Origin: Octopus bimaculoides
Lineage: Eukaryota
DNA length: 63,599 nt
Direction: 5' to 3'
Assembly: GCF_001194135.2 (NCBI RefSeq)
Contig: NC_068985.1
Coordinates: 44,379,664 to 44,443,262, forward strand
The notes under the pieces were generated by a model. It was not told the origin of the DNA. It searched no databases and saw nothing but the letters and a program-made list of their open reading frames with translations. Shown piece by piece: positions 39,651-63,599 of the stretch. The position numbers were made by a program, and so were the translations under genes. Each line of letters begins with the position of its first letter. Within the stretch, counting starts at the first letter, position 1.

Positions 39651-39669
39651 TGGTGATGAGTATATTAAT

Positions 39670-40341: not shown

Positions 40342-40427
40342 AGAAGGTCAGGAATAGCTGTCTTACTACAAAGGAGATACTTGGCTACCCCAGTAGGACA
40401 AAGAAGCAGAGGAAGGCAGGAGAGAGA

Positions 40428-40467
<40 letters not shown>

Positions 40468-41501: not shown

Positions 41502-41567
<66 letters not shown>

Positions 41568-43061: not shown

Positions 43062-43285
43062 AGGAGAGTATTGTAGTTCGCTTGAAGCATTGTGTATTGC
43101 TTGTAAAGAATAAAAAGTTTTGAATGGTACAACAATGCACTATAATACAAAAAATGGACTATATTCCTTAAGGAATTGTATTCCGAAATATCATCGGACT
43201 ATAGATAACTAAATTACAACAGGTATATAGTCCATTTTTTGTATTATAGTGCATTGTTGTACCATTCAAAACTTTTTATTCTTTA
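43062..43285. mobile_element. 224-bp insertion carrying a 63-bp perfect inverted repeat, with 11-bp TSD
   Basis: cacacaaccat at 43051-43061 and 43286-43296; arms at 43102-43164 and 43225-43287. Confidence 0.8.
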
Positions 43286-43732
43286 CACACAACCATGCTT
43301 ATATGCTTGAATGTAAAAAGAAATATATATATATTCTTTATTTGTTATCCTCAAAGATTCTTAGTAGGTAAGTGAACTAGGAAGTTAATGATTGGTTATT
43401 GGAAATAATTCTGAGACTATTAATTATGAGAGAAGGTTCTATTAGGCTTTGTAGATTGGGATTAATTTATTGGTTGATCCAACAGACTGGCTTTAATCCT
43501 GATTTGGTAATCACCATGGAACGCTTGTGAATTGAGGGGTAAATATCTCGGTGGAACTACTCATTTGAATCTATTATTTAGTAATGAGAGAGGTTTCTAG
43601 CAGACTGCCCAATTAGGTGGTACATTATCTGTTGAGGAACAAACTGTGATTGGAGAGGGTGGGGGGAGAAAGAGAGACAGAAAGAGGGAGAAAGAAAGAG
43701 AGCGAGTGGGCTAGTGCTCTTGGGAGATGTAT

Positions 43733-43768
<36 letters not shown>

Positions 43769-43950
43769 CTAGTGCTCCTGGGAGATGCATAGGGTGAATG
43801 AGAGAAAGAAAGACATTAAAAACTGGACAGACAGTAGATGGATGATAGATAGATGGTGAAATATAGAACCAGATAAAGACAGTTAATCATGTATTGGTTG
43901 AGATAGATACAGAACTATAGTTAGATAAAGTAATTACATGTGAACGTGTG

Positions 43951-43991
<41 letters not shown>

Positions 43992-44430
43992 ACACATACA
44001 TATACAATGTATATATGTCTGCCTGTTTCTCACTCTCATACATGGATATGATATGTTGGAGAAAGGCGAAAATGATATTGCACATGAATTCACAAGAACG
44101 GTAAATTATTGGGTAATTATTTTAAGGGAATCAACTCACATGTTTATTTGTACATAAAGGATTACTGCACACATGAAAGAATATCCAACAGTAGACATGG
44201 ATGAATAAAAATATACAAAGATCTGTGCAATTTTCTCTTGTTTGTTAAGACAAACAGGCAGAAAGAAAGAAAGAAATAGTCAGCTAGCTAGAAAGATAGC
44301 TAGCTAGATAAACAGATAGCTAGTTAGCTAGATAGCTAGACAGACAGATAGACAGACAGACAGACAGACAGCTAGCTAGCTAGACAGACAGACAGACAGA
44401 TAGATAGATAGACAGATAGATAGACAGATA

Positions 44431-45587
44431 TCTTTTTATTATAGCCACACAGGGCTAAATACAGAAAATGGACAAATTACAAAGTAGAGCTTTTCTTGGG
44501 GGGGGTGGATAATTTCGATCAAAAGGGATCGCGGGAAGANNNNNNNNNNNNNNNNNNNNNNNNNNNNNNNNNNNNNNNNNNNNNNNNNNNNNNNNNNNNN
44601 NNNNNNNNNNNNNNNNNNNNNNNNNNNNNNNNNNNNNNNNNNNNNNNNNNNNNNNNNNNNNNNNNNNNNNNNNNNNNNNNNNNNNNNNNNNNNNNNNNNN
44701 NNNNNNNNNNNNNNNNNNNNNNNNNNNNNNNNNNNNNNNNNNNNNNNNNNNNNNNNNNNNNNNNNNNNNNNNNNNNNNNNNNNNNNNNNNNNNNNNNNNN
44801 NNNNNNNNNNNNNNNNNNNNNNNNNNNNNNNNNNNNNNNNNNNNNNNNNNNNNNNNNNNNNNNNNNNNNNNNNNNNNNNNNNNNNNNNNNNNNNNNNNNN
44901 NNNNNNNNNNNNNNNNNNNNNNNNNNNNNNNNNNNNNNNNNNNNNNNNNNNNNNNNNNNNNNNNNNNNNNNNNNNNNNNNNNNNNNNNNNNNNNNNNNNN
45001 NNNNNNNNNNNNNNNNNNNNNNNNNNNNNNNNNNNNNNNNNNNNNNNNNNNNNNNNNNNNNNNNNNNNNNNNNNNNNNNNNNNNNNNNNNNNNNNNNNNN
45101 NNNNNNNNNNNNNNNNNNNNNNNNNNNNNNNNNNNNNNNNNNNNNNNNNNNNNNNNNNNNNNNNNNNNNNNNNNNNNNNNNNNNNNNNNNNNNNNNNNNN
45201 NNNNNNNNNNNNNNNNNNNNNNNNNNNNNNNNNNNNNNNNNNNNNNNNNNNNNNNNNNNNNNNNNNNNNNNNNNNNNNNNNNNNNNNNNNNNNNNNNNNN
45301 NNNNNNNNNNNNNNNNNNNNNNNNNNNNNNNNNNNNNNNNNNNNNNNNNNNNNNNNNNNNNNNNNNNNNNNNNNNNNNNNNNNNNNNNNNNNNNNNNNNN
45401 NNNNNNNNNNNNNTGCACAAGTTTGATCCCGGATGGCAGAGCTGTTGTAGAGCTTGGCGACACTCGCGGTGCCAATCGCCCAGTTTCGGTCTCTTCCTGA
45501 TCCATGTTTGCAGTTCGGTGAGTGAGACGAGCTGTGGGAAGGCGTGCCTCACAAACGGCGCCCACACCTGTTCACCGTCGTCAATGA
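44431..45587 (-). mobile_element. Young 5'-truncated non-LTR retrotransposon (tentatively L1/Tx1-like) inside a (GATA)n tract; middle is a gap
   Basis: GC/CpG-rich open frame DDGEQVWAPFVRHAFPQLVSLTELQTWIRKRPKLGDWHRECRQAL; 3' end AATAAAAAG abuts the repeat; (GATA/GACA)n on both sides. Confidence 0.6.
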
Positions 45588-45590
45588 GAC

Positions 45591-45641
<51 letters not shown>

Positions 45642-47320
45642 CAGACAGATAGACAGATAGACAGACAGACAGACAGATAACTTTCTTTATTAGCCACATA
45701 GGGCTGAACAGAGGGGACAAATACAAATCAATAGAAACAACTATCTTACCAGTTACATGATGTCTCTACCTAGCTAAGGACCAACGAGCACACTCCAATG
45801 CACTGTATATGGTGACAAGTAGAAAGCAAGAAAGGTGGATTTGAATAGAGTATAACAGTTGCTGTTCCTCAACATTTGTAATGGTGTGTGAACCTGCAGT
45901 GCTGAGCTCAAATCCTTTATGGCTAAAATCTTGTAGTTTAGTAAGGAGCATTGGTGTATATACAAAGAATGATTAAATCCAACACATTATGTAGAAGGAA
46001 TGCTGGAAAATATTCTAGTTTCACTCACACACATGCACTATGTGTGTGTGTATGAACATGTATGCATATATGTGTATTTAAGGTGTGTAGCTTAGTGGTT
46101 AGGATATTCAATTTATGGTTGTAAGACTGTGGGTTCAATTTCTGGCAGTGCATTGTGTCCTTGAGCAAGACACTTTGTTTTATGTTGTTCCAGTTCACTC
46201 AGCTGGCAAAAATGAATTGTACCTGTAATTCAAAAGGGCCAGCTTTGTCACATTGTGTCACATTGAATCTTCCTGAGAACTATGTTAAGGGTACGTGTGT
46301 CTGTGGAGTGCTCAGCCACTTGCATGTTAATTTCATGAGCAGACTGTTCCGTTGATTGGATCAACTGGAACCCTCATCATTATAACTATCAGTGTCAGTA
46401 TTCACATGTGTGTGTATGTGTGTGTGTGTGCATGAAAACATCAGATTATCACATGAAAACAGAAAGAGTACTTGAATTGTGAGAAGGGGAAAATGAAAGT
46501 TAAGTATTATATCTAAGATGATACAGCTAGATAAACTGGATAAATATTTAGAGTAATGAGAACTGGGTATGTATGTGATCAGATAAAACAGGGAAGAATT
46601 TTGATAACATGAGACTGAGAAAGTCAAACATAACAACCCAAAGATAGCAGATTATATACAATAAAGACATAACAGAAACAGATAAAGCAATTAAACAGAC
46701 TTTCTAATAATCCTTAATTGAATGAGAAGAGGATTGTATCCATAGACTTTAAAGTGGTGAGATAATTAAGAAAGGAATAGATTCATGGCAAGCTAATGCA
46801 AAATTGTGCAAAGGAAATATAATCCAAAAGATTAATCCATTAGCAGATGAGTTGCTACCAAAATGTCTTGTGACATTTCGTTACAGCAACTTTCCCTTTG
46901 AGCTCAAATCCTGAGTTCAAACACATTGCACAATGTAAACTTGAATGAAGAGTTGATCAACGTTGAAATACCTTTCATCATAAGTCAAGATAAAATCTAA
47001 CATGGGGCTCAACAATAACAACAACAACAACCCACTCCTTGAAGTCAGTAGAACTGATCACCCATTACAGGTCAATCAAATGTGTTTAGAATCAATATGT
47101 TTTTAAATAATTTATTCTGACCTATATGCGGTGCCAGATGATCAATGATACCTCATTTGAGGCCTTGTTCCAATGTTGTTCTCACGATGATCAATAATTA
47201 TTAGTATTAATTAAGATAACGAGGACTTATATGATAATTTCAGGTCTCATGAAATAGTTTTGTACTTAACTGACATCACATCAATACTGTTGGTACACCT
47301 GGCTCTGTGTGTGTGTGTGT

Positions 47321-47359
<39 letters not shown>

Positions 47360-49699
47360 CTGGTATGAGTTGGATGGTTCAACATGGAGCTGCTTAGCAG
47401 GGAACAGCTTGAGTCTGCACAGCACCCTGCTAGCCAGCTCTATGTCAAACTGTCCAATCAATGCCAGCATTGAAAACGGACATTAAATGATTATGCTGCT
47501 GCTGATATATATATATGTATGTAAATATATATATATATGACTAGTTGTCTAAAAATCCATAACTCAGAAAAACTGGCACCCATATGTCAGTTAATGGAGT
47601 AGTTACTATCATTATTATTATAATTAGGTGGCGAGCTGACAGATTTGTTACCACACTGGGCAATATGCTTAGCAGTAATTCATCTGCCACTATGTTCTGA
47701 GTTCAAGTTCTGCCAAGGTCGACTTTGCCTTTCATCCTTTTGATAAACTAAGTACTAGTTAAGTCCTGGGGTTGATGCAATTGACTTAGCCCCTCCTTCG
47801 AAATTGCCTTGTGCCAAACTTTGAAACCATTATCATTTTTGTTTAAGCAACCTACTCATTGAATTAGTGTACAAGTAGCAGAGTGTTCCACAGACATATG
47901 TACTTATAATGTAATCCTAAACCATAATCAGTGTTACACAATGAGTGACAAAGTGACATTTAAATATCAAGGTAGAAGCTCAATAAGATGAATTGTACAA
48001 GGTTCTGTCCATCTAATTTCATTCAAATAGCTTGGGTTTACCTGAGGCTATGGTAAAATAACTCTTATGGGATTGAACCCAAGACCTCATGATTACAAAT
48101 CAAGCTTCTTCACTACTCAGCCATATCTGAGCCCATTGTTACTTTTTATAGCTTTAATACAGACACAATAGAATATAACTGAGATCGATAATTCAATACA
48201 CGCAGCAATGAAGAAACAACAAAGCGAGGATTTTTCACATGAGTGATTTGGAATTTCAGAAACCAATTTAAAATTATTAACACTACAACAACAGTATGGT
48301 TTTCATTTATCTGTCATTAGTTGATAGACAACTACTGCATGTTAGTAGTTGTGTGTGTTAACTGACTATGTAATTAACAAAACAATTTCAGTTAATTAAA
48401 ATCACCTTTGCAGTCAGGAGTGTGTGCAGCCAGCAGAACAGAATATTGTTTGTATACTCCTTGAGATAACTATTTGGTTGTTGGTAAGACAGCATAATAG
48501 TTTATACAATATTTTATGAAATATAAATAGCAGTTGTCCCAGGAGGCCAGTTTTGGTCAAAGCAGACTTAATGCATACATATATAATTTATAATGGATAT
48601 TCACACATAAAATGGTGTTAGCTGTAAGATTTCATCTGAGAGAGAGATATAAAAATCGTTATTTTAACCTAGTGCTGTTTGGAATATATATATCAATGTA
48701 ACTTAAACCTTGTCCTTGGTTCAAATATGCAAATGTTTTTGTTTGCTGTTTTCTATGAAGAGATAAATTCTGATTGAGAATGACTGGAGGTGTCTAACAC
48801 TGACTGGCACTCTGCCGGTTACAATGATGAGGGTTCCAGTTGATCTGATCAATGGAAGAAACTGCTGGTAAAAATAACATTCAAGTGGCTGAGAACTCCA
48901 CCCTTAACATAGTTCTCAGGGAAATTCAGAATGACACAGAATGTGACAAGGCTGGCCTTTTAAAATACAGGCACTACTCTTTTTTGCTAGCTGAGTGAAC
49001 TGGAACAAAGTGAAATAAAATGTCTTGCTGAAGGACACAACATGCTGCCAGGAATCAAATTCATGGCCTTTACAATCACGAGCCAAATACCCTATCCACA
49101 CTAAGAAGGCAAAATTAATCCAAAACACCAGTGTTTGATGGTCTACTGATGTCTTTCTGAGTGAACAGTGTTTTTAACACACAAAGTCTCTTCAGAGAAG
49201 TTTCCTTGAGACAAAAATTTTACATCATTATTTTAATATAAAGCACTTTCAAAAGTATACACGTATGTTTTTACACACACCAGTAACAAGCATACTATAT
49301 ATACATATATATCATCATATCATCAACATATTATAATATTTGCAGGGGTCAGATAGAATCCATTGAGGTAGATTTTCTATGTATGTATGCCCATTCTGTT
49401 GCCAATCTTCACCTGTTTCCAAGAAAGGTAATATTTCCCCATGACCAGACAGGTTTTCATGGAAGATTGGAAATGATTGACACAGATTGTGTGATGCTCA
49501 TTTACAACTCTCATGCAATGTCAACATAAAGTGATACAAACACACACACACACACACACACACACATTTATATACACGATAGGCTTCATTCAGTTTCTGT
49601 TTATCAACTCTACTCAGAAGATTGAACATGAGGTTGAGAAACAAACTTCTTAACCAAACAATCTTGCTTATGTCTAACCATGCACAATGTATATATATA

Positions 49700-49862
49700 G
49701 GCGCAGGAGTGGCTGTGTGGTAAGTAGCTTGCTTACCAACCACATGGTTTTGGATTCAGTCCCACTGTGTGGCACCTTGGACAAGTGTTTTCTACTATAG
49801 CCTCGGGCCGACCAAAGCCTTGTGAGTGGATTTGGTAGACAGAAACTGAAAGAAGCCCATTG

Positions 49863-49946
<84 letters not shown>

Positions 49947-50155
49947 CTTGTGTGTCTGTGTTTGTGCCCCCAACATCGCTTGACAACCGATGCTGGTGTG
50001 TTTACGTCCCCTTAACTTAGCGGTTCGGCAAAAGGGACGATAGAATAAGTACTAGGCTTTCAAAGAATAAGTCCTGGGGTCGATTTGCTCGATTAAAGGC
50101 GGTGCTCTAGCATGGCCACGGTCAAATGACTGAAACAAGTAAAAGAGTAAAAGAA
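49700..50155 (+). mobile_element. SINE family A, full length
   Basis: ggcgcaggagtggctgtgtggtaag head through aaaagagtaaaagaa tail. Confidence 0.9.
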
Positions 50156-50252
50156 TAGTACAATGGTCACTGATTCCAGCCAGTGGGCTATGGCTATAAT
50201 GGGGCACTGCATTTCAAAACAACAACAGGTCCATTGTAAAAATCCAAATATA

Positions 50253-51148
50253 TGAGGTCTGATCAATAAATAATTGGACTGTTGCCATAGTAACGAAGCT
50301 AAAGCATGCAAAGTGAAGCTGCTTGGCACAGATTGACCTTGGGCTCCGTTGTGCATACGCACTAAGTTTTAACATTCTAGTTCACTTCCCTTGTTTACAG
50401 TAGCACTTGGAAGGAACATGTGTAGCATGTAATCGTGACATTGACCATGACAGACAAAACTGTCATGGCAATACTTGCTCAGAGGCCTATGCAAAGTTGC
50501 AGAAAGTGTAAGGAGAGGAGTGTATGAGTCACACATAAATGTACGAGTGGTTCAGACGTTTCCAAGATGGCTGAAAAAATGTTGATAGTGATGAGCGTAC
50601 TGGGAGACCTGCAACCAGCAGAACTGAGAAAAAAAAAACATTGCAGATGAGTATGCAGCTGTGAGGAGAAATCGTCGAATCACCATGCATGAGTTATCAG
50701 AGGATGTGCAAATTAGTTATGGTTCAGTTCAGTTCAGTTCATTATCCCTGAAGATTTGGGTAGGAGATGCATGTCTGTCAAGTTTGTGCCAAGACTGCTT
50801 TTAGCTGACCAAAAAAGACACTCAGGTTTCAGTTGCACAAGATCTCCTTGATTGTGTTGAGAATGATGAAAACTTTTTGAAAACTTTGCATAAGTCTCTG
50901 AACAGGTATCACCAAGCTTTTGGCAAAATTTGATGCAGATTCTCTACTCAACTTTCTCGGTCATAGTCAATGCGATGATCACATGCTACACATGTTCCTT
51001 CCAAGCACTGCTGTAAACAGAAGTGAGCTAGAAAACTTAGTGTGCATGCACAGCAGAGTTCAAGGGTCAATCTGTACCAAGTGGCTTCACCGCATGCTTT
51101 AGCTTTGTTACTATGGCAACAGCCTGGATACTTATTGATCAGATAATG
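50253..51148 (+). mobile_element. Non-autonomous mariner derivative with transposase N-terminal remnant
   Basis: TA at both ends; TIR tgaggtctgatcaataa; remnants YEWFRRFQDG, DERTGRP, RRITMHELS and KFVPRLL. Confidence 0.9.
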
Positions 51149-51399
51149 TATTTATATATCAATAAAAATATGTACGTATATATGTGTGCAAATTAAAATG
51201 TACAAATAATTATATATGTATGTGAGTGTATGTGTAAGTACGTGTGTGTGTGTATATATATATATACACACACACACCTTTTTATTGCTAATTAGAAAGG
51301 TCTTTTTTTCTCTATCATATTTTGCTTATATGTCAGGTGGATATAAATATAGGTATATAACTATAAATGTATACATATTCATAGGTGTCTTCACTCACA

Positions 51400-51453
<54 letters not shown>

Positions 51454-52033
51454 GGTGTTTGTGTGAACATGTGCATACAAACATATAAGTATATTCACAT
51501 ATATGCATACATGTGTATATATGTGAAATGCCATCACCATTAAAAAATACACACACATCACATGTGCCTGAATGGCCATGCCATTTCTCTTGCACATATC
51601 ACAGTTGGTAAGGAAATTGGAATTAGGTTCCCATTTGCCTCCATTACCCACACCTGACATATAAACAAAATAGAAAAAAAATACCTTTCTAATTAACAAT
51701 AAAAAAGATATGTGTGCGTGGTTGATTGTATATATAAAAATGAATATAAAATGATGGTGAGTATGAATGCATGCATGCGTGTGTATACATGCATGCACAC
51801 ACAAATTCGTTTATGCATACATACACATGTATACACACACACATATATATATATATAAACTCACACACATGTATAAATGCAATATATGTATCAATACATG
51901 TATATATATANNNNNNNNNNNNNNNNNNNNNNNNNNNNNNNNNNNNNNNNNNNNNNNNNNNNNNNNNNNNNNNNNNNNNNNNNNNNNNNNNNNNNNNNNN
52001 NNNNNNNNNNNNNNNNNNNNNNNNNNNNNNNNN

Positions 52034-52076
<43 letters not shown>

Positions 52077-52939
52077 TATACACACATATATATATACTTA
52101 CAATAATACAGATTTCATATATAGGTATATCTATCTACATATATATATATATATATATATATAAAGTATGTATGTGTGTATGTGTCTATATATGTATGGG
52201 TGTGTATGTATATATGTGTGTGTGTGTGTGTGTGTGCATTTCTGTGTGTGTATAAATATACATTAAATGTATACATACATCCAAATACACACACACACAC
52301 TCATTCATACAAGAGGAGATTAGTAAATCCTTTCTCGTCATGAGCAGAATGAGTCATTTCAACACAGACCAGATATATGACTTTTTTTTATTTATTTCTT
52401 CTTTCTTTCTGAACAAAACAGTGGAATCAATAATCTATTGATTAGATGTAGTTCAATACTCTATGTAGAAATCAATGTAGATATAATAACTGGCTAGTTT
52501 GGTACAAGAACTTTACCTAATCATTGAACTGATGTGAAAGAAAGAAAGAAAGAGCAGGAGAAAAGGACAAGAGCAAACAACATCAGCAACAATACTGTAT
52601 GTGTATGCACATGTGTGTATATATATATATATGCACACACACACACATCCATATACACTTTATGTATAAGGTGCATGTGTATGAGTAGACAGATGTAGAT
52701 GAGTTCAACAAAAGGTGAGACCAAAAAAAGATGTTTTGTTTCATTGGAGAACGCATTCTAAGTGCCTTTGCTATGGCTCCTTGACTAGGTAACCCTGGAA
52801 TGTATTCTGCATACACACACAATACATACACATCTTTCTACACATATAAATACACTTTATACAATTTGTTGGTGTGTATGTGTGTATATATTGCCATGTT
52901 GGGCTGCTGAACTCTACACAGTTTTTCTCTTGTTGTTTT

Positions 52940-53100
52940 TTCTTTCTCTCTCCATTTTTTCCTCTTATTCCTTTCTGTCAAAGAGCATAGGCTCAAAATA
53001 TAAAAGACTTTTCCATTTTTCCCAAGCATTAAACTAATACACCTGCTTGTTGTTCCAACACTTGTCCTCGTCTTTTGTTTTTCTGTAAATTTCAACTATA
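52940..53100 (+). mobile_element. Possible Penelope-like 3' fragment; related piece at 22300-22440 (-)
   Basis: ttctg..aagag..taggctcaaaa motif shared by both loci and resembles PLE terminal-repeat motifs. Confidence 0.4.
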
Positions 53101-53126
53101 CAAACACACACACACACACACACATA

Positions 53127-53609
53127 CTCTTTTATTTGTTTGTCATTTGACTACGGCCATACTGGAGCACTACCTTTAGTCGAGCAAATTGACCCCAGGA
53201 CTTATTCATTGTAGGCCTAGTACTTATTCTATCGGTTTCTTTTTGCTGAACCGCTAAGTTACGGGGACGTAAACACACCAGCATCAGTTGTAAGCGATGG
53301 TGGAGGGACAAACACAGACACACAAACACACACATACACACGCGCGCACTCTCTNNNNNNNNNNNNNNNNNNNNNNNNNNNNNNNNNNNNNNNNNNNNNN
53401 NNNNNNNNNNNNNNNNNNNNNNNNNNNNNNNNNNNTATATATATATATATATATATGCATATGTACGACGGGCTTCTTTCAGTTTCCGTCTACCAAATCG
53501 GCCCGAGGCTATAGTAGAAGACACTTGCCCAAGGTGCCGTGCAGTGGGACTGAACCTGGAACCATGTGGTTGGTAAGCAAGCTACTTACCACACAGCCAC
53601 ACCTGCGCC
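53127..53609 (-). mobile_element. SINE family A, full length, gap in internal microsatellite
   Basis: Reverse complement of the family A consensus. Confidence 0.88.
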
Positions 53610-54964
53610 TATATATAAATAAATAAATAAATAGAAGTGAAATTCTGTCTCTCTGGGACCCCTGTATCTCAGTCTACATTTGCTCTCAATATATTTGAAA
53701 GTCTATGAGAATTACTTAATACAGTTTTTGAAGAGTAAAGGTGATTTAAAAAAAAAAAAATTTATGAAATCTTTTATAAGGATGTTACTAACCTTTTGGG
53801 AAAAAGTTTTTTTTCTAGAGTGTGAGTGCTTTCATTTAACCTTTTCAAACATGTGCTATATATATATATAATTATATATACAAGCAGATTATCATATAGA
53901 TGTATGTGTGTGTAAGTAGTCCCCACCATTACTTGACAATTGGTGATGGTTTGTTTACATCCACCATGGCTAAGTGGTTCAGTAAAACAGACCAATAAAA
54001 TAAATACTAAACTTAAAAAATAAGTACTGGAGACAATTTGTTTAACTAAACCTTTCAAGGTAGTACCCCAGCATGGCTGCAGTCCAATGATTGAAATCGG
54101 TGAAGTAAGAAGAGAGTGATGGTAGTGGTGATCGTGGGGTGGGGGAAGAGGAGAAAAAAAAGAACGAAGGACGTAATTTGTGAATAAGATCAGTTTAACA
54201 AACATCACTGACATTTCATCTGAGGCATTGTAAAAGGACAAAAACCATTTACGGAAGTTAATAGAATCTTAATGATTCCACAGAGCAAAGTGTGTGTGTG
54301 GGGGAGGGAAAAGAGAGGCAGAGTTTCATTTACCTATATGTGTCTGTACATGTGTGTATGCGCATGTGTATGGATAAATGTGACACACACATACATACAC
54401 GTAGTAAGTACAGTGTGTGTGTGTGTGTGTATGTATGCGTGAGTAAGTGAGTGAGTGTGCATATATATGTGTGCATGTGAGTGAGTGTGTGTGAGTATAT
54501 GCATGTGTGTGTGTATGAGTGTATGTATATGTGTGTGTGTGTGTGTATGCATGCGTGTGTGTGTGTGTGTATGAGTGAGTGTTTGTATATGTGTGTATTT
54601 TCAATGGGTGAGTAACATCATGAGATGGTACTATCAAATAAAAGTTCCCGTGAGCGACTTTGTTCTCTTTTTCTGTCTTAAAGGGGTATTTTGCATCATA
54701 CTATTACCCCGTATTATTTATATAATTTCATTTGCATTTGTGCAACTATGTTAAAAAAAAAAAAGACAAATTTATTTGCCTATTAATATAAACGATCTGC
54801 AGTTTGCAACAAAATAATTTAATATGTATTTTAATAATTCACTTAGGCATAGTGAGACTAATAACCTGATGTAGAACTCAATATATGGATGATCAAGAAC
54901 ACAATGTTATATAAGTATAAAGTGGTAACAGAAAACAAAGAGATGACACTGGAAAAACCAAATG

Positions 54965-55075
54965 TTACCTAATGAACTTCATTAGCTTACAGCTGTTTCT
55001 GCTGTAAGATGTGGTGGACTCTTAGTTGAGTACCAGAATATCATCCTATCGCTCTATCAGAACCTTGAATATGAA
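54965..55075 (-). repeat. Interspersed repeat shared with 17545-17670 (possibly Penelope-like)
   Basis: atgaacttcattagcttacagctgtttct..taagat..gtggactc..gagtacc is near identical at both loci. Confidence 0.6.
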
Positions 55076-56186
55076 GTGTATATGTATTTATAACAGAATT
55101 AGAGAAAAAAAAGCTAGAAACGAGAGCTGGCATGGTAAACTTAGCAAAAATTAAAGTATTAGCAAGTAGGGGAGAAAACAGAACCACAGTACTATGAGAG
55201 AAATGGCTTTGTACAATATACATCACCTTTGTTTAGAATCATTATACCCTCTCTTTTATTCTCCTTTAGTTAAAAGTGGTCACTTTAGGTCCTTAATTTT
55301 GCAACCCCACTAGTGCAGGCGACAAGAGACAAAATACATTCTGTAAAGTGGTTGACATTAAGAAGTGCATCTACCTTTAGAAACCATGCCAAAGTAGACA
55401 TTGAAGTTCAAAGTAGTCCTCCATCTTGTTGGATCCTGTTGAACAGTCCAGCCTTTGACAGCATGGAAGATGGAACTCATGCCAGTTAAACAATGATAAT
55501 GATAATGATGTTAATTTATATGATATATAAAATATATTGTGGTTAGTAAATATTGTTTATTATAGTTTAGCTGTGACATTATATATGAACTTTTACATTC
55601 TGATATCAACTTTGCCCATCATCTTTGTGGGGTCTGAGGTCGAAGGGGTCAATAAAATACAGTACCTGTCAGATACTGGGGTCAATACATTTAGCTGGTA
55701 CAGGTGAATTTCAAGTTTCTTCAACAAGATATTATGGCTAAGAATCTCATACAAATCAGCAAAATGTTGTTTGTACTTTAACCATTAAGCATTTAAACCG
55801 GCCATATCCGGTCCAAATATTTTACTTGATTTATGTTCAAATTCACCAGATCCACCCTATCACACATACCCTAAAATGTCATTGTAAAAATAAATAACCA
55901 CATCATTGAAACCTCCTGACATTTCGTCCATCTGCACGACCTGAATTCAAATTTTGCCAAGGTTGACTTTGCCTTTCATCATTGACTTATCTCCTCCTCC
56001 AAAATTGCTGGCCTTGTGCCAAAATTTGAAAACCATTATTATTATTTCCCTATTTTCACACCATACTATTGATTTTACTTTGAAAATGGATATACAATAT
56101 ACAAAATACAAAAATGAATTTACCATTCATAAGTTTAGAGTTGAGATTCTGAATTTATGAATGGAGAAAATAGTAAAAGAATTTAC

Positions 56187-56279
56187 CTGTTTCTTGCTTC
56201 TTCTCTTCATAATTCTTGAGGAAATCTCGAATAGAACCATTCCTCCAGCAGCCATTAATTGGTAAGTTTTTCGGACCAC
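56187..56279 (-). CDS. Internal coding exon of a selenoprotein J / J1-crystallin-like ADP-ribosylglycohydrolase family gene
   Basis: Acceptor ttgtgtttaatcAG and donor CAG|GTAAAT. 93 nt, phase 1-1, open frame GPKNLPINGCWRNGSIRDFLKNYEEKKQET(G). This resembles the remembered SelJ/J1-crystallin block GGP..LPIxGPWRxxSxKxFLKN....KxETG. Confidence 0.75.
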
Positions 56280-57339
56280 CTGATTAAACACAACAACATT
56301 AATTATTTTGGATCCAGTCTAGTCTAGTGGTGGTCTGCTCTTGGGCAGATCGTTGCATGTAAACCTTTACCAGCACTTTCTGTACAACCAGAGAGGTTCT
56401 GTAACCCTCCCCTGCCACATTAACATTTAAACTAGCCATATCCAGCCCAAATATTCTACCTGTTTTATGTTCAAACCACCCATATCTGGCCTCCCATACC
56501 TACCTAACAATGTCATTCTAAAAATATACAACCACATCATCAAAATTTCAAAGGTATGAGATAAGGTATGATTAATTTCTAAACAATATAAATAAATAAG
56601 CTATACATTTGACAGAAAATACTGGAGTGGTTTCCCATTGCCTTCTCTAGGCAGATTGGATTTGAACTCAGAATGTAAACAGCTAGAAGATATACTGCAA
56701 AGCATTTCTGCCACTCTTACATGCACAGAGCAATGTGAAATGAAGTGTTTTGCTCAAGAACACAACATGCTGTTTGGTCTGGGAATTGAACCTATCATCC
56801 AGTGATTGTCAGTGCAACACCCTAACCACTAGGCCACACTTAGTGGTTAGGGTATTGCACTCACAATCACTTTCAAAAGACCGAATTAACTGGGTGCAGG
56901 AATGGTCGATTGGTAACCACATAGTTCCAGGATTCTGTTCCACAATGTGTCACATTAGGTAAGTACCTACTACTGTAGACACAAACTGACCAAAAGCCTT
57001 GTTGATAGATTTGGTAGTCAGAAACTGAAAGGAGTTTGTCTGTGTGTGTGTGTCACTGCCTTGACATTATGCGATGATTGTTCTAAACAAGTGTCATCAT
57101 CTTCTAAGTGTTGTTCATTTCCAGTCTTCCATGAGAAATATGTCTGGCTATGGGGAAAATATTATCTTCCTTGGAAACAGAAGAGGGCATCCAGCTGAAG
57201 GAAACCTGCCTCAACAAATTCTGTCTAACCCATGCAAGCATAGAAAAGTGGAGGTTTTCATGCAAGGAAACTACAAGTGGCCAGCACCACTGGTTTTACA
57301 TAATCATTGTTTAACATCTCTTGTTAAGATTATCATCAT

Positions 57340-57960
57340 CATCATTGTTTAACGTCCATTTTCCATACTGGTATGGGTTTGACGGTTTGACTGAGGTCTG
57401 GAGAGCCAGCGGCTGCACCAAGCTCCAATCTGATCTGGCAATGTTTCTACAGCTTGATGCCCATCCTAATGTCAACCACTCTGAGAGTGTAGTGGGTGCT
57501 TTTTACGTGCCATTAGCACAGGAGCCAGTCAGATGGACCAGGATCGACCATGTTTGGATGGTGCTTTTTATGTGTCACTGGCACAGGAGCCAGTCAGGTG
57601 GCCCTGACATTGATCACGTTTGCATAGTGTGTTTTATGTGGCACCAGCATGGGAGCCAGTCAGGTGGCCCTGGCATTGATCACATTTGGTTAGTGCTTTT
57701 TATGTGCCACCAGCATGGGAGCCGGTCAGGGGCTACTAGCATCGGCCACACTCGGATGGTTCTTTTTTAGGTGCCACCAGCACAGGAGCCAGTCAGGTGG
57801 CCCTGGTATTGATCACGTTTGTGTACTGGGTGCTTTTAAGTGCTACTGGTATGGGTACTTCTATGTGACACAGGCACAAGTGCATTCCTTTAATGTAACA
57901 CTGACATGAATGCATTATATGTGGCACCAGCATGAGTGCTTTTTACGTGGCACCTGGTAT
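57340..57960 (-). mobile_element. RTE tail element (family E) with internal about 65-bp tandem array
   Basis: Unit starts at about 57496, 57561, 57627, 57693, 57759, 57830. Confidence 0.8.
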
Positions 57961-60479
57961 ATATAAAATATGGCTGTGTGATTAAGAGGTGTACTTTTCA
58001 ACCATATGGTTTCAGGTTCAGTTCCACTAAGCAGTATCTTAGGCACCTGTGCTGACCAATGTCTTGTGAGTAGATTTGGCAGACAAAAACTGAAAGAAGC
58101 TCATTGTGTGAGTGTGCGCACACACACACCCACAAAACAAAAGATGGGATGCCTGGCAATATGAGGTTCTCAGAAAGATATGTCCTCTTCAGTTAAACTG
58201 AATTCTGTAACTACTATGTATATTGTACTTTTCACCCACCCTTGCCACAGCCAAATTACCTCTCACTGTGCACTATACCAACCTCTTCCCAACCTTGGTT
58301 CCTGCAAACGACCCAGCCATGTCCTTTCTCTCTTGTCCTGTTGCTTGTCCCCCACCCCATGCCACCACACTCTCTCCTGCATTTCTCTGTCTTCCCCCAA
58401 CTCTTGGCTCACTGATCATCCACCCTTCAACCCTATCCAATTTTTACAGTTGCAGTCTGCTTCCTCAGCCCTTCATCTCCTGCTCCCTGCACAATCTTGC
58501 AAATCACCCACTTCTACTTACCATGTGCCTTGATGGTTCACTGGATTCATTGTCACTATCTTTTCCTTTTATTTTTTTTTTGGTTTGTACAGATCATTCC
58601 TCTTTTCTCCTTCCACTCTCCTACAAACTGTGAGTGGTCATGCAGATCCTCTACAACTTGCTCTCATCTCCCCTCCTTCTCATACCCTCATCCCCTAGCA
58701 TAAAGCTGACCCCCCCCCACCTTCCCTGGGGTTCATAGTCCTGCAAGCTTCATTGTGACCTCAATAGTGCTTGTTGCATGAAAAAACAAACAAACACCCA
58801 GTACACACTGTAATGTGGTTGGCATTAAAAAGGGCATCCACCCATAGAAACCATGCAAAAGTGGACATTGGAGCATGATGCAAACCTTGGATCCAACAGA
58901 TCCTGTCAAACTGTCCAACTCAGGCCAGCATGGAACATGGATACTAAACGATGGTCATGACGATAATATCTGCCAAGAGAACAGAAACTTTAAACTAAAC
59001 TAATAAAGAATATAATGTACTGTTTGCTGGAGAATTGAATACTCTATCCTCTACTATAAGCCTTACTCCCACAAACAAACCGACAGTATCACACACACGA
59101 TTCTGGAAATTTAAACCAACAGGATCACCCACACACAAACACACATACAATCCTGGAAGTGGAAGGGAACTGTGTATACATCTGTATATATATATATAAA
59201 AGAGAGGATGCATGTGTGTGTGTGTGTGTGTGTGTACGTGAATGTAGTTTATGCACGTCCACAAATTAGCACGCATGTCGCTCCAATTTTAGGAGGAGAT
59301 GTGTCATGACCTTATGTGCATTTTCGCCAAGTTTTTGTCTCAGAGGCACCCGTGTATAGCTGTAAAAATCGATAATCTTTTACCAATTTTGAAGTTTGTT
59401 GACAAACTGAAGAAAGAAATAGTGTGTTTGTGACGGGGGGAGACATACAGTGTTTGCTAGCGTCCNNNNNNNNNNNNNNNNNNNNNNNNNNNNNNNNNNN
59501 NNNNNNNNNNNNNNNNNNNNNNNNNNNNNNNNNNNNNNNNNNNNNNNNNNNNNNNNNNNNNNNNNNNNNNNNNNNNNNNNNNNNNNNNNNNNNNNNNNNN
59601 NNNNNNNNNNNNNNNNNNNNNNNNNNNNNNNNNNNNNNNNNNNNNNNNNNNNNNNNNNNNNNNNNNNNNNNNNNNNNNNNNNNNNNNNNNNNNNNNNNNN
59701 NNNNNNNNNNNNNNNNNNNNNNNNNNNNNNNNNNNNNNNNNNNNNNNNNNNNNNNNNNNNNNNNNNNNNNNNNNNNNNNNNNNNNNNNNNNNNNNNNNNN
59801 NNNNNNNNNNNNNNNNNNNNNNNNNNNNNNNNNNNNNNNNNNNNNNNNNNNNNNNNNNNNNNNNNNNNNNNNNNNNNNNNNNNNNNNNNNNNNNNNNNNN
59901 NNNNNNNNNNNNNNNNNNNNNNNNNNNNNNNNNNNNNNNNNNNNNNNNNNNNNNNNNNNNNNNNNNNNNNNNNNNNNNNNNNNNNNNNNNNNNNNNNNNN
60001 NNNNNNNNNNNNNNNNNNNNNNNNNNNNNNNNNNNNNNNNNNNNNNNNNNNNNNNNNNNNNNNNNNNNNNNNNNNNNNNNNNNNNNNNNNNNNNNNNNNN
60101 NNNNNNNNNNNNNNNNNNNNNNNNNNNNNNNNNNNNNNNNNNNNNNNNNNNNNNNNNNNNNNNNNNNNNNNNNNNNNNNNNNNTCTAACGGTTTTTGTGT
60201 GTTATTTTAAATGGCTTATAAACACCTTCCACGCTACATTAAATAAAGTTTGATACTTTATAAGCATGAAAATAAAATAAAGACAAAATGTGTAAATATT
60301 TTTTTCTGATCTAGGATGTGAGTGTAAAAAGGTTGATAGCAAAATTGAGACTTAGTCTCTCTCTATCACCTTTCAACAAAAATATATATTAGGAAACAGT
60401 AGAACAAAGGCAAGTGTTAACAATTAACAACATAATAAAATAAGTTTTATTTTGGTGATGCTTGGCTTTACAAAACCTG

Positions 60480-60730
60480 TATCATTCAGCCTGGTCGCTG
60501 CTGGTTAAATTGTAATCAGCATCTGGAGTTTAAGAGATTCGTTGAGGCATCCCAGAGGAGCGAGTGTTGTCACATCGAAAGCATCGTGCTGAAGAGGCTC
60601 AGAAAACGCGCGAAGCGCTTTAAGTACGGGTTTACTACGCATGCACACTCGAGGGGCTTCTGGGAAGGCAAGTCTCTTGCGCATGCGTAGATTGAACTTC
60701 CTTAATGGCGGCCATAATTTCGCGCCACTA
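60480..60730. promoter_or_regulatory. CpG-rich promoter-like region
   Basis: High CpG density; TGCGCATGCG (NRF1/Ewg-like) at 60678-60687; AATGGCGGCCAT (YY1-like) at 60704-60715; TTTCGCGCCA (E2F-like) at 60718-60727. Confidence 0.65.
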
Positions 60731-62493
60731 CATGAGCTTATAAAGTATCAAATCTCAATTTAATTTAAAGCAGTAATGGTTGTTTTAAGTTAGGCGGGGA
60801 GAAAGTAGAGATTGAAGGATGTAATAAGATTTGAACAAATGAGCATTTCGTCAGTAATCCAACACCTCATATTCCAACTGGTAAAAATAACAAGAGTAGG
60901 TAGGAGATTAAAATTCCCTAAGCGAAACAAATTTAATAATATAACGTAAATAATTAAGAAATACTAATAATTCTTTTCCTAAATATCGAAGAAATGNNNN
61001 NNNNNNNNNNNNNNNNNNNNNNNNNNNNNNNNNNNNNNNNNNNNNNNNNNNNNNNNNNNNNNNNNNNNNNNNNNNNNNNNNNNNNNNNNNNNNNNNNNNN
61101 NNNNNNNNNNNNNNNNNNNNNNNNNNNNNNNNNNNNNNNNNNNNNNNNNNNNNNNNNNNNNNNNNNNNNNNNNNNNNNNNNNNNNNNNNNNNNNNNNNNN
61201 NNNNNNNNNNNNNNNNNNNNNNNNNNNNNNNNNNNNNNNNNNNNNNNNNNNNNNNNNNNNNNNNNNNNNNNNNNNNNNNNNNNNNNNNNNNNNNNNNNNN
61301 NNNNNNNNNNNNNNNNNNNNNNNNNNNNNNNNNNNNNNNNNNNNNNNNNNNNNNNNNNNNNNNNNNNNNNNNNNNNNNNNNNNNNNNNNNNNNNNNNNNN
61401 NNNNNNNNNNNNNNNNNNNNNNNNNNNNNNNNNNNNNNNNNNNNNNNNNNNNNNNNNNNNNNNNNNNNNNNNNNNNNNNNNNNNNNNNATGGCCAATGCT
61501 GATGACTTGTGAGTTTTCCTATGAATAAAATATTTAAAATTTTATTATAAAATATTATATTTTAAATACATTTAAAAGAAGAAAATGTTCGTTGGGATTC
61601 ATATATGTGTAAGAAATTGCAGTATCACTGAGCAGAAAACATAATTATATGAAGCACCATAGTTCAATACAATTTCATTTAGTGAATTTCCTAAACATTT
61701 AACGTAGATGGCATTAATCTATGCAAATTTAAAAAGAGCCAGATGTTAGCTACATATCTCCTTTATTGCAAGTCACCTATTTCTGTCCCTCTACCCAAAC
61801 ACTAACCTTTCATTTGGCAAATAGTCACCTTCCCCAGTACTACTCTCCACTCAGCTGAGGGAATCTTGTTTTGAAAATTATTTGGTGATCACACTGTTGC
61901 TGGTGCCATGTAAAAAGCACTCAGTACATACTATAAAGTGGTTGGTGTTAGGAGACTGAGCTGTAGAGACCATACTAAGCAGACAATGGTGTTTGGAGCA
62001 GTCTCCTGACTTGTTAGCTCCTGTCAAACCATCCAACCCAGGCCAGTATGGAAAATGGACGTTAATTGATGAATGAAAATGAAATGGATGATGTTGGAAG
62101 GGATAGTGTTAGAAGACATGGATAATAAAAACCAAACCATTGCATAAAAATTAGCTTCTCTTTCATTAAAATAATTGGCTGTTTTTAATTAAATAATTTT
62201 CCTGGATAAAAAATGGGTAGGGGTGTTTGTGAAACGCCATTTGGAGTGTGGAGGTGTTGAGCTACAAAGTGCTGAAAACCCCTCCTTAACATAACAAATG
62301 AGACTTGAGTATACTATGAAAAATTATACACGCATATATTATCTTCCATTCTCTCAGCTTTTCCCTGTCTATTGTATTATTATTATTCTATTGTTCTTCA
62401 CCCCTTCTATAGTGTCAGTCAGCACAAACTCTTCTGAATTTCCCATCCAACACATCTGTAGCACTGATCATCCTCCATCATTTACTATATTCA

Positions 62494-62659
62494 CAGAGCA
62501 GGCTCAAGGCACCAGCAACTTGGGCAGTGACCTGGAGCCCCATGTGCTAGGGGACGCCAAGGAGGGCATGACAAAGATAAGGAAATTTCCATGACTGTCA
62601 GCTTGTACATACCAAAGTTCAGCTTGCCCGGGGAAGCAGCAACCCTAGGGCCAGCCCTG
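62494..62659. mobile_element. hAT-type MITE
   Basis: 8-bp TSD tatattca (62486-62493, 62660-62667); imperfect TIRs cagagcaggc / gccagccctg. Confidence 0.8.
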
Positions 62660-63454
62660 TATATTCACCCCTTAACCTTACTCAAACTCTATTCATCATC
62701 TACTCTCCCCTACATTCCATTTAACTCTTATTTATCATCAAGCCCCATTCAACCCTTGTTTAGCATTTGGTATATTCATCCCATCCTACCCTATATCTAA
62801 ACCATCCCTCACATAGTCTTGCAACTTCTTGTTCATCAATTCCCAGATACCTTGTCACTAATTTTTATTGTTCTTTCCAGCTTCATCCATATAGCAAGAT
62901 ACTTGTTCTGGACTCTTCCTCCATACATCTTTTTATCACCAATCACAAAGCAGTCTAGTGCCATGGAAAACTATGCAGTACCCTCTGTAAAGTGGAAAGG
63001 GTATCAAAACAAACTCCCTTATAGACATCATGTTACATAAGCTCTTACTAGAAAAATATATAAATTTATTTTAAAATAACACCTACCAAGAAGGACAAAT
63101 GAATAAACAGGACAAGAGGAGGCATGGGACAGAGAATCACTGCTGAGGTCACAGAATGTGTGACAAAAGAACATTGACAGTCATATAAATTAAAAGTAAA
63201 ACAAATAAAAACTAAAGTGAATATCAAATAAATAGTGTGCTTAATTAGCAAGAAAAAAGATCATTCACAAGTATAATAATAGCCACAGTTGCTACAAGAA
63301 TATAATCTGTAAACAATGCAGCACATTGGATGATAAACGAAAAGATATGTAGTGAAACTACCTATCGTCACTAGATACAAAACTACTATCGCCATTACAT
63401 ACTATCTTCTCATTTAAATATAAATAAATGTGAGCGTAGTAGAGAACCCATTCC

Positions 63455-63599
63455 TTGTCATCACGTGACTGATTATTATTCGAATCAGCAACTTCTTCGA
63501 ACCGTTCCCGCCAGAACGCAAACTGACCAATCACGGCCCCTAATAAGGTCACGTGATAGAGTAAAATTCTGAAGGCATTTGGAGCCCTCTTAACGCTAT
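63455..63599. promoter_or_regulatory. CpG-rich promoter-like region at the window end
   Basis: TCACGTGA E-boxes at 63461 and 63549; TTCCCGCCA at 63505; CCAATCA at 63527. Confidence 0.6.

What the first reader, a model, noticed from the sequence alone, without database searches (positions are those of the whole stretch)
56187..56279. Orphan SelJ/J1-crystallin-like exon: possible cephalopod selenoprotein or crystallin-related gene
This is the only convincing host coding exon, and it is below the ORF track threshold. SelJ is a patchily distributed ADP-ribosylhydrolase-family selenoprotein related to jellyfish lens J1-crystallins. From memory (unverified), the Sec/Cys residue lies just after the ETG motif, which would be the first full codon of the next exon. 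This copy has GCW where relatives usually have GPW. No other exon was visible. They may lie in gaps (e.g. 59466-60183) or outside the window, or this may be a stranded duplicate.
Basis: partly seen in the sequence, partly recalled or inferred. Interest (0 to 1): 0.75.

Follow-up and report, generated by a model that had tools for sequence, protein, structure and literature searches.

The report
Octopus selenoprotein J gene exon
The 93-base stretch is a real coding exon (exon 4) of the octopus gene that databases call "crystallin J1A"; it looks alone only because the gene's introns are huge, and the gene is very probably a selenoprotein J whose database model stops too early at its selenocysteine codon.

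Summary
Observation confirmed. Window 56187-56279 (minus strand) is a 93-nt open interval between an AG acceptor and a CAG|GTAAAT donor. Its peptide is 33/33 identical to residues 107-139 of XP_014782921.1, "crystallin J1A [Octopus bimaculoides]". The same 93-nt exon, with the same borders, is present in Argonauta hians.

It is not an orphan. The annotated coding range is 103 kb in O. bimaculoides, 131 kb in O. sinensis and 402 kb in O. vulgaris. In Argonauta the intron after this exon is 64% of the gene. So a 63.6-kb window holding one exon is expected.

The SelJ/J1-crystallin assignment is right, but the remembered Sec position is wrong. The residue after ETG is Ser in Octopus and Cys (TGT) in Argonauta and fish. 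The Sec codon lies about 115 codons downstream, at the annotated "stop" (…FKNN-TGA).
- Two cephalopod-type transcripts read through that TGA for 79 more conserved codons and carry a SECIS-like 3'UTR element.
- A fish SelJ transcript has TGA at the same column; salmonid SelJb and Lingula have Cys there.
- Argonauta and Pomacea both have TGA-C|GTAAG, a conserved splice donor right after the TGA.

Sec use in Octopus itself is inferred, because that exon lies outside the window. A lens role is untested.

The parts
56187..56279 (-). Coding exon, 93 nt, with phase-1 introns on both sides. It is exon 4 of the O. bimaculoides 'crystallin J1A' / SelJ gene. It encodes (S)GGPKNLPINGCWRNGSIRDFLKNYEEKKQET(G), residues 107-139 of XP_014782921.1.
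   Evidence: Sequence and translation. 33/33 identity to P0022. Orthologous 93-nt exon in Argonauta at L006 25587-25679 with the same borders. Includes 3 of the 20 invariant residues of the family (P, W, R).
56280..56300 (-). 3' end of the upstream intron (intron 3). The AG acceptor is at 56281-56280, preceded by a T/G-rich tract (tgttgttgtgtttaatcAG).
   Evidence: The Argonauta orthologue has ttttaatAG|GTGGTCC at the same place.
56181..56186 (-). 5' splice donor GTAAAT of the downstream intron (intron 4). The junction reads CAG|GTAAAT.
   Evidence: The Argonauta orthologue has the identical CAG|GTAAAT.
1..56180 (-). Inferred interior of the very long intron 4. It holds interspersed repeats, microsatellites, six assembly gaps and a retrotransposon integrase remnant. 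No further SelJ exon was found.
   Evidence: tblastn with Octopus, Argonauta, squid-type, Lingula and fish proteins finds nothing else. Argonauta intron 4 is 30.6 kb of a 47.9-kb gene. The O. bimaculoides coding range is 103 kb. Gaps.
56301..63599 (-). Inferred part of intron 3, 7.3 kb with two assembly gaps (59466-60183 and 60997-61488). Exon 3 was not found.
   Evidence: Argonauta intron 3 is 3.5 kb. Scaled by 103/48 this gives about 7.5 kb, just beyond the window edge. This is inference.

Best explanation
The stretch is exon 4 of the single-copy Octopus bimaculoides gene that RefSeq annotates as 'crystallin J1A' (XP_014782921.1). This gene is the cephalopod orthologue of selenoprotein J (SelJ/SELENOJ).

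The exon is spliced through a canonical AG acceptor and a CAG|GTAAAT donor. It contributes 31 codons plus two split codons that form the subfamily-specific segment LPI-G(P/C)WR-x-SI(K/R)-x-F-x-KN...ETG. In a high-confidence model of a full-length relative this segment is a loop, an 11-residue helix and another loop.

The exon stands alone in the window because octopus introns are huge. The rest of the gene lies more than 7 kb upstream and more than 56 kb downstream.

The full protein has an ADP-ribosylhydrolase (ARH) fold in which the canonical metal-binding GGDTDS motif is replaced by GGCNAS. It therefore probably does not act as a classical Mg-dependent ADP-ribosylhydrolase.

The annotated stop (…FKNN-TGA) is most likely a selenocysteine codon, followed by a phase-1 intron and at least two more exons (about 79 codons) and a SECIS element in the 3'UTR. 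The database proteins would then be truncated.

Shown: exon identity, orthology, splice-site conservation, the gene span, and the TGA plus readthrough in relatives. Inferred: that O. bimaculoides itself keeps the Sec codon, the C-terminal exons and the SECIS; the biochemical function.
For: Identity and orthology:
- 33/33 identity to P0022, O. bimaculoides; 32/33 to O. vulgaris P0014.
- Family hits in the exhaustive search carry PF03747 and source names crystallin J1A-like or Selenoprotein J.
- Argonauta has the same 93-nt exon with the same borders, and conservation is confined to the exon.

Gene span:
- Coding ranges are 103 kb, 131 kb and 402 kb in three Octopus species. Argonauta intron 4 is 30.6 kb of 47.9 kb.

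Sec site:
- Two cephalopod-type transcripts have in-frame TGA after FKNS/FKNN, then 79 conserved codons up to TAG/TAA.
- A fish SelJ transcript has TGA at the same column, and so does a gastropod-type transcript.
- Salmonid SelJb and Lingula have Cys there. [quoted passage not shown]
- 32 of 64 family proteins end at this F-x-x-x position. They come from cephalopods, gastropods, bivalves, fish, amphioxus and a sea urchin.
- Argonauta reads AAC TGA C|GTAAGT and Pomacea reads AAC TGA C|GTAAGA. Pomacea's next exon starts AT TTG CCT GGA, giving H-L-P-G, and further C-terminal exons follow.

SECIS:
- A conserved 3'UTR block AUGAC-helix-AAAAA...helix-UGA is present in both cephalopod-type transcripts.
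- Rfam SECIS_1 is the top family at that block, at 17.7 and 12.6 bits. The fish SelJ positive control scores the same, 14.8 bits.

Fold:
- AlphaFold model of salmon SelJb: pLDDT 93, pTM 0.93. Best structural matches are ARH-fold proteins (MJ1187, DraG, ARH3) at TM 0.6-0.8.
- GGDTDS aligns with GGCNAS.
Against: - No DNA of the other O. bimaculoides exons could be fetched because the gene range exceeds 100 kb. So the TGA, the C-terminal exons and the SECIS are not shown for this species.
- In Argonauta no C-terminal exon was found within 10 kb downstream of the TGA.
- All SECIS_1 scores are far below Rfam's gathering score of 35. SECIS_1 was not among the matches in the gastropod-type 3'UTR.
- The species of the two cephalopod-type transcripts is not stated. 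It is inferred from 73-74% identity to Octopus proteins and the shared short loop.
- No expression data were available for the window's exon.
Confidence: 0.9

Rival explanations
1. The gene is real, but in Octopus it is not a selenoprotein. On this view TGA after FKNN is a true stop, and the protein is the 254-aa truncated 'crystallin J1A' exactly as annotated, the C-terminal exons having been lost in octopods.
For: All three Octopus models and the Argonauta model end at FKNN. No C-terminal exon was detected within 10 kb downstream in Argonauta. No Octopus transcript was available.
Against: The same truncation is seen in fish, amphioxus and sea-urchin entries, which are lineages with Sec-SelJ (PMC13134290; PMC3473315). 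Argonauta keeps TGA followed immediately by a consensus donor, C|GTAAGT, at exactly the position of the Pomacea intron that precedes the C-terminal exons. Cephalopod-type transcripts read through the TGA. Annotation pipelines routinely stop at Sec codons (PMC12822975).
Confidence: 0.15
2. The exon is a stranded duplicate or pseudo-exon. On this view it is a copy of exon 4 left behind by segmental duplication or retrotransposition, and it is not spliced into any mRNA.
For: No other exon of the gene is in the 63.6-kb window. The exon is flanked by interspersed repeats.
Against: The peptide is 100% identical to the annotated protein, with an intact frame and both splice sites. Splice sites and exon length are conserved with Argonauta. 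The annotated coding range of 103 kb and the proportions of the Argonauta introns predict exactly this isolation. The flanks carry introns, so it is not a processed copy.
Confidence: 0.04
3. The exon is a chance open reading frame that only resembles ARH or SelJ proteins.
For: Thousands of AG...GT open intervals of this size exist in the window. The peptide alone gives no Pfam hit. Its PDB hits are spurious repeat matches.
Against: E=2e-18 with 33/33 identity to a same-species protein. Five independent family members align at the same position in a 1.84-billion-protein search. The exon is conserved at DNA level with Argonauta.
Confidence: 0.01

Closest known systems
Selenoprotein J (SelJ/SELENOJ) of ray-finned fishes, sea urchins and amphioxus (Castellano et al. 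2005, as cited in PMC13134290 and PMC3473315)
   Same: Same subfamily: about 45-50% identity over the whole length. The exon-4 motif LPI-GPWR-SIK-F-KN-ETG is shared. In-frame TGA sits at the same alignment column (F-x-N-x-U-x-LP) in a fish transcript and in cephalopod-type and gastropod-type transcripts. The database models are truncated in the same way.
   Different: Lineage: the literature I could read lists fishes, sea urchins and amphioxus, with Cys forms in cnidarians, and found none in the limpet Lottia (PMC13134290, PMC3473315, PMC3828610). After ETG, cephalopods other than Argonauta, and gastropods, have Ser where fish have Cys. Octopus has GCW instead of GPW. Cephalopods have a shorter loop before the motif. 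Octopus introns are tens of kb long.
J1-crystallins (J1A/B/C) of the box jellyfish Tripedalia cystophora
   Same: This is the source of the database name 'crystallin J1A(-like)' given to the Octopus, Argonauta, Lingula and many fish proteins. It is described as forming one subfamily with SelJ (PMC13134290).
   Different: J1-crystallins are lens structural proteins and, per the literature cited, Cys forms rather than Sec forms. No evidence was obtained here for lens expression in cephalopods.
ADP-ribosylhydrolases with solved structures: MJ1187 (1t5j), DraG (2woc, 3g9d), human ARH3 (2foz, 6d36)
   Same: Same all-helical ARH fold. Pfam PF03747 matches at E=9e-41 for the Lingula member. Foldseek TM is 0.6-0.8 for the SelJb model. 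The profile search hits 1t5j at E=2e-14.
   Different: Only 13-18% identity. The exon-4 segment lies between the two stretches that align to MJ1187 (profile 91 to 146), so it is specific to the subfamily. The GGDTDS metal-binding motif is GGCNAS in the cephalopod-type proteins, so classical catalysis is doubtful. None of these enzymes has Sec.

Membership tests
SelJ / J1-crystallin subfamily | Sequence similarity to named SelJ or J1-crystallin-like proteins, at the homologous position | tested here: met
   The exon peptide aligns at 61-72% identity to the same segment of reedfish 'Selenoprotein J', Lingula and Argonauta 'crystallin J1A-like'. The full Octopus protein groups with fish SelJ in the profile search.
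SelJ (as a selenoprotein) | In-frame UGA at the conserved Sec column, followed by conserved coding sequence | tested here: inconclusive
   Met in two cephalopod-type transcripts, a gastropod-type transcript, a fish transcript and the Pomacea genome. Argonauta has TGA plus a conserved donor. For O. bimaculoides only the protein end ...FKNN is known; the DNA lies outside the window and could not be fetched.
SelJ (as a selenoprotein) | SECIS element in the 3'UTR | tested here: inconclusive
   A conserved block has the AUGA / AA / GA core and a 9-bp helix in L001 and L005. SECIS_1 is the top Rfam family there, but at 12.6-17.7 bits against a gathering score of 35. The fish SelJ control scores 14.8 bits. 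No SECIS was found in the window, as expected if the 3'UTR lies elsewhere. SECISearch3 was not available.
   That codon is Ser in Octopus, TCT in L001, and TGT in Argonauta. It is Cys in 30 and Ser in 28 of 64 relatives. The Sec column is about 115 residues further on.
SelJ (as a selenoprotein) | Actual selenocysteine incorporation | not testable with these tools
   Needs 75Se labelling or mass spectrometry.
ADP-ribosylglycohydrolase family (Pfam PF03747, ARH fold) | Match of the protein to the family profile, and the ARH fold | tested here: met
   The gene product is listed with PF03747. Relatives match at 2e-18 to 9e-41. The SelJb model matches ARH structures. The 33-aa exon peptide alone gives no Pfam hit.
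ADP-ribosylglycohydrolase family (catalytically active members) | Conserved acidic and Thr residues of the binuclear metal site, such as the C-terminal GGDTDS-type motif | tested here: not met
   MJ1187 GGDTDS aligns to GGCNAS in the cephalopod-type proteins and GGCTCS in fish; only Lingula and P0126 keep GGDNCS. The N-terminal motif is CYGDQ. Judging it against the canonical Ser/Thr-Asp-Asp rests on my own knowledge.
Lens crystallin (taxon-specific structural protein) | High abundance in lens | not testable with these tools
   No expression data available. The name 'crystallin J1A' is a similarity-derived label.

The most novel reading that the evidence does not exclude
Octopus, cephalopods and molluscs in general may carry a genuine Sec-containing SelJ that every database entry examined here truncates at the UGA and labels 'crystallin J1A(-like)'. 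That would move SelJ from a 'patchy fish / sea urchin / amphioxus' family to one already present as a selenoprotein in the bilaterian ancestor, with a conserved phase-1 intron right after the Sec codon. In Octopus, the lineage-specific Pro-to-Cys change in the invariant GPWR motif of this exon could add a second redox-active residue; its position relative to the Sec site was not measured. The first part has good comparative support. Whether it is unpublished is uncertain, because Castellano 2005 and Baclaocos 2019 could not be read here. The Cys idea is pure speculation.
Probability: 0.6. Interest if true: 0.4.

Novelty: new member of a known kind. Interest (0 to 1): 0.3.

Why it matters
For the window, the result is mundane. 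The one 'orphan' exon is explained by an already annotated gene with introns of tens of kb. This shows that in cephalopod genomes a 60-kb window can hold a single 93-nt exon.

The wider point is annotation quality. The Octopus, Argonauta, gastropod and bivalve 'crystallin J1A-like' entries, and many fish 'Selenoprotein J' entries, end at the same column. Transcripts show an in-frame UGA there, followed by about 79 conserved codons. These entries therefore probably lack about a quarter of the protein, including the Sec residue and the GGC(N/T)xS motif.

Correcting them would widen the known distribution of SelJ. It would also supply invertebrate material for a selenoprotein whose function is still unknown.

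Tried and rejected
- Pfam scan of the 33-aa peptide at E<=10 gave no family. The segment is subfamily-specific and lies between the parts that align to other ARH proteins.
- phmmer of the peptide against PDB sequences gave only designer pentatricopeptide-repeat proteins. Their scores are sums of about 2-bit repeats, so they are spurious.
The 42-aa stop-to-stop ORF found no candidate. The exhaustive HMMER search was needed.
- In that search, P0002-P0004 are low-complexity or repeat bacterial-type proteins hitting NG(T/C)W...NG, and were rejected as chance.
- tblastn of Octopus, Argonauta, squid-type (including the C-terminal extension), Lingula and fish proteins against the window found no second exon. 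The weak hit HGLDGLTEDW at 2159-2188 is on the wrong strand and inside a dispersed repeat.
- DNA for the O. vulgaris, O. bimaculoides and O. sinensis genes could not be fetched because the ranges exceed 100 kb.
- Rfam on five transcripts together showed no SECIS at E<=1, only sub-threshold miRNA-like scores on a long hairpin. SECIS_1 appeared only when the search space was narrowed.
- SECIS_1 was not among the matches in the gastropod-type 3'UTR L008.
- A first guess at a SECIS around ATGGATGATG in L001 was dropped, because it lacks a 3' GA and a proper helix.
- Rfam on the whole window at gathering thresholds found nothing.
- The papers PMC1283428 (Castellano 2005) and PMC6885538 (Baclaocos 2019) are not held.
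- Literature searches for cephalopod or mollusc SelJ found nothing specific.

Full report
**1. The observation**

On the minus strand, window 56279->56187 is a 93-nt stop-free interval. It is preceded by ...tgttgttgtgtttaatcAG and followed by GTAAAT. In the relevant frame it reads (S)GGPKNLPINGCWRNGSIRDFLKNYEEKKQET(G). The first two bases complete a codon and the last base starts one, so both flanking introns are phase 1.

The stop-to-stop frame is only 42 codons (56283-56158) and has no ATG/GTG/TTG start. That is why the ORF list does not show it.

Exon-like shape alone is worthless here. About 2,570 AG sites in the window open an interval of at least 93 nt that ends at a GT. The window is AT-rich draft eukaryotic sequence with eight N gaps. 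The 370 bp around the exon (56047-56417) are single-copy within the window and sit between dispersed repeats.

**2. Is the homology real?**

Three quick tests gave nothing useful:
- The peptide alone gives no Pfam hit.
- It gives only spurious repeat-summed hits to PDB sequences.
- The word-indexed search found nothing.

An exhaustive HMMER scan of 1.84 billion representatives gave eight hits at E<=1e-3. Five of them align to the whole peptide at 61-72% identity. Three of those five are PF03747 (ADP-ribosylglycohydrolase) proteins. Their source names are crystallin J1A-like [Lingula anatina], Selenoprotein J [Erpetoichthys calabaricus] and crystallin J1A-like [Argonauta hians].

Searching with the Argonauta protein found 'Crystallin J1A' of Octopus vulgaris. 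Its 90% cluster also holds the O. sinensis and O. bimaculoides proteins. The window peptide is 33/33 identical to residues 107-139 of O. bimaculoides XP_014782921.1 (E=2e-18). It is 32/33 identical to O. vulgaris. The window is therefore O. bimaculoides or something extremely close to it, and the exon belongs to an already annotated gene.

**3. Why it looks orphaned**

No other part of any family protein matches the window. The annotated coding ranges are very large:
- O. bimaculoides: 103,237 bp for 254 codons.
- O. sinensis: 130,587 bp.
- O. vulgaris: 402,279 bp.

In the more compact Argonauta genome the gene could be read (L006). Its exons lie at about 10001-10063, 20283-20465, 22038-22121, 25587-25679, 56330-56488 and 57746-57943. 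The fourth exon is the orthologue of the window's exon. It is 93 nt with ttttaatAG|GTGGTCC...CCAG|GTAAATtcc, the same borders and phases.

Window-to-Argonauta DNA similarity is confined to the exon plus about 10 nt on each side (78% over 113 nt, E=1.7e-21). The intron after this exon is 30.6 kb, or 64% of the Argonauta gene.

Scaling by 103/48 predicts about 66 kb for intron 4 and about 7.5 kb for intron 3 in O. bimaculoides. The window offers 56.2 kb and 7.3 kb. Finding only one exon is therefore the expected result. Exon 3 could also sit in one of the two upstream gaps; this cannot be decided.

**4. What the exon encodes**

In a 64-sequence family alignment only 20 columns are invariant. Three of them (P of LPI, and W and R of GPWR) lie in this exon, along with seven nearly invariant columns.

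The Pro of GPW is Pro in 58 of 64 sequences. The Cys is shared by all three Octopus species; Argonauta has Gly. So GCW is a lineage-specific substitution and not a sign of decay.

A profile search of PDB sequences aligns family positions up to 91 and from 146 onward to MJ1187, but not the exon-4 segment. The segment is therefore specific to the SelJ/J1 subfamily, which explains the missing Pfam hit.

An AlphaFold model of full-length salmon SelJb (pLDDT 93.1, pTM 0.93) places the equivalent residues (about 115-146) as loop, helix 129-139, then loop. The model's best structural neighbours are ARH-fold proteins (MJ1187, DraG, ARH3; TM 0.6-0.8, 13-18% identity).

**5. The selenoprotein question**

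That codon is:
- Ser in the three Octopus proteins (GSESDEQ).
- TCT in a cephalopod-type transcript.
- TGT (Cys) in Argonauta.
- Cys in fish.
- Across 64 relatives: Cys in 30 and Ser in 28.

So it is not the Sec site.

All annotated mollusc proteins stop at the same place...F-K-N-N. Two transcript contigs from public RNA-seq assemblies were examined (L001 and L005). Their species is not given. They are 73-74% identical to the Octopus proteins and share the cephalopod-specific short loop. In both, that stop is TGA, and the frame continues for 79 codons. In L001 these read VLPQALQAALHGLLKSHDFVSGVNTTIQAGGCNASRAGFIGACMAAQYGLENVPENWRKQ...; L005 differs at a few residues. The frame ends at TAG/TAA. 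This extension is homologous to the C-termini of Lingula and fish proteins.

Further evidence at the same alignment column:
- A teleost SelJ transcript (L009) has FPNT-TGA-GLPGAF, and a gastropod-type transcript (L008) has FRKD-TGA-HLPGSF.
- Salmonid 'selenoprotein Jb' and Lingula have Cys there. [quoted passage not shown]
- 32 of 64 family entries, from cephalopods, gastropods, bivalves, fishes, amphioxus and a sea urchin, end at this position. This is the usual mis-annotation of Sec codons (PMC12822975).

Genomic DNA agrees. Argonauta reads AAC AAC TGA C|GTAAGT and Pomacea reads AAG AAC TGA C|GTAAGA. Pomacea's next exon starts ...tcactag|AT TTG CCT GGA, giving U-H-L-P-G. Further C-terminal exons lie at L007 16179-16315 and 16865-16957. 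A phase-1 intron immediately after the Sec codon is thus conserved between a gastropod and an octopod.

**6. SECIS**

The two cephalopod-type 3'UTRs share a strongly conserved block about 95 nt after the true stop. It contains AUGA-C, then a 9-10-nt helix strand, then AAAAA, then the complementary strand, then UGA. The helix is perfect in L005 and has two mismatches in L001.

Rfam's SECIS_1 is the best-scoring family on that block over its full length. It scores 17.7 bits (E=0.31) in L005 and 12.6 bits (E=8) in L001, against a gathering score of 35. The fish SelJ transcript, used as a positive control, scores 14.8 bits. So the model under-scores SelJ SECIS elements in general.

I call the element SECIS-like, not proven. 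SECIS_1 was not among the matches in L008, and nothing reached a gathering score in the window. The latter is expected, because the 3'UTR is elsewhere.

**7. Likely function**

The protein has an ARH fold, but the C-terminal metal-binding motif (GGDTDS in MJ1187) is GGCNAS in the cephalopod-type proteins and GGCTCS in fish. I infer that classical Mg-dependent ADP-ribosylhydrolase chemistry is unlikely. The Sec lies in a loop between two helices (residue 262 of the salmon model), which suggests a redox or other Sec-dependent role. This is inference. SelJ is functionally uncharacterised (PMC13134290). A lens-crystallin role in cephalopods is untested; the name is similarity-derived.

**8. Comparison with what is known, and novelty**

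The literature available here lists SelJ in actinopterygian fishes, sea urchins and amphioxus, with Cys homologues in cnidarians. It found none in the limpet Lottia (PMC13134290, PMC3473315, PMC3828610). I found no paper describing a cephalopod or mollusc Sec-SelJ. Two key papers could not be read, so prior description cannot be excluded.

The exon itself is already in RefSeq. What may be new is that the cephalopod and mollusc 'crystallin J1A' genes are Sec-SelJ genes truncated in annotation. That makes this a new member of a known kind.

**9. Verdict**

The family and the selenoprotein hunch are right. 'Orphan' and the Sec position are wrong.
- Interest is modest (0.3).

Noticed in passing
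window 2753-3280 (+): A 175-aa ORF matches the retroviral or retrotransposon integrase core domain (Pfam rve, E=1.9e-8). It is probably an LTR-retrotransposon remnant inside the long intron.
   Followed up: partly
window 57496-57821; related copies at 2116-2396, 16531-16674, 7652-7829, 4438-4612: A 66-bp tandem array of 4.9 copies at 78% match lies 1.2 kb upstream of the exon. It belongs to a dispersed repeat family seen several times in the window.
   Followed up: partly
window 55777-55915 and 56418-56617; copies at 18968-19165, 9177-9366, 42572-42706: The exon is bracketed by two copies, in the same orientation, of one interspersed repeat about 79% identical to other copies in the window. 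Many ORFs across the window share motifs such as ...GTEPGTMWLVSKLLTTQP..., which suggests an abundant SINE-like element.
   Followed up: no
window 15723-16251, 21056-21065, 28396-28723, 44540-45413, 51911-52033, 53355-53435, 59466-60183, 60997-61488: There are eight assembly gaps (N runs). Most are flanked by TA/CA/GA microsatellites. Exon 3 of the gene could be hidden in one of the two gaps upstream of the exon.
   Followed up: partly
P0014 (O. vulgaris CAI9723581.1) and its gene range: The O. vulgaris model spans 402 kb and ends in ...PKQLTFALCFPSRPTWVAV instead of the conserved ...DLDTALVSHLQKV...FKNN. Its last exon is probably wrong.
   Followed up: no
P0012, P0079, P0080, P0096, P0114 and other 'full-length' family models: Several fish and mollusc gene models reach the C-terminus only by skipping or re-splicing around the Sec codon. 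Examples are Polypterus ...MVAA|LPGAF and Bradybaena FKNN|YLPEAM. This is a second type of selenoprotein mis-annotation.
   Followed up: partly
L001 1623-1729 and L002 1636-1720: A long near-perfect hairpin sits in the distal 3'UTR of the cephalopod-type SelJ transcript. It gives sub-threshold miRNA-precursor scores, for example MIR5565 at 35 bits against a gathering score of 80. Its meaning is unknown, and it is not the SECIS.
   Followed up: no
L006 1-7119 (-) and L007 2507-9563 (-), 17444-21452 (-): The neighbours of the SelJ gene differ between species. In Argonauta the upstream neighbour is an F-actin capping protein alpha gene. In Pomacea the flanking genes encode an F-box/WD40 protein and an ankyrin-repeat protein.
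   Followed up: no
P0001 (ENA contig, 12.8 kb) and P0005/P0009 (ENA contigs, 0.9-1.6 Mb): These are junk 'proteins' called across the homologous exon in other unannotated eukaryotic assemblies. They were the best hits for the peptide. This shows that such mis-called ORFs can flag real exons.
   Followed up: no
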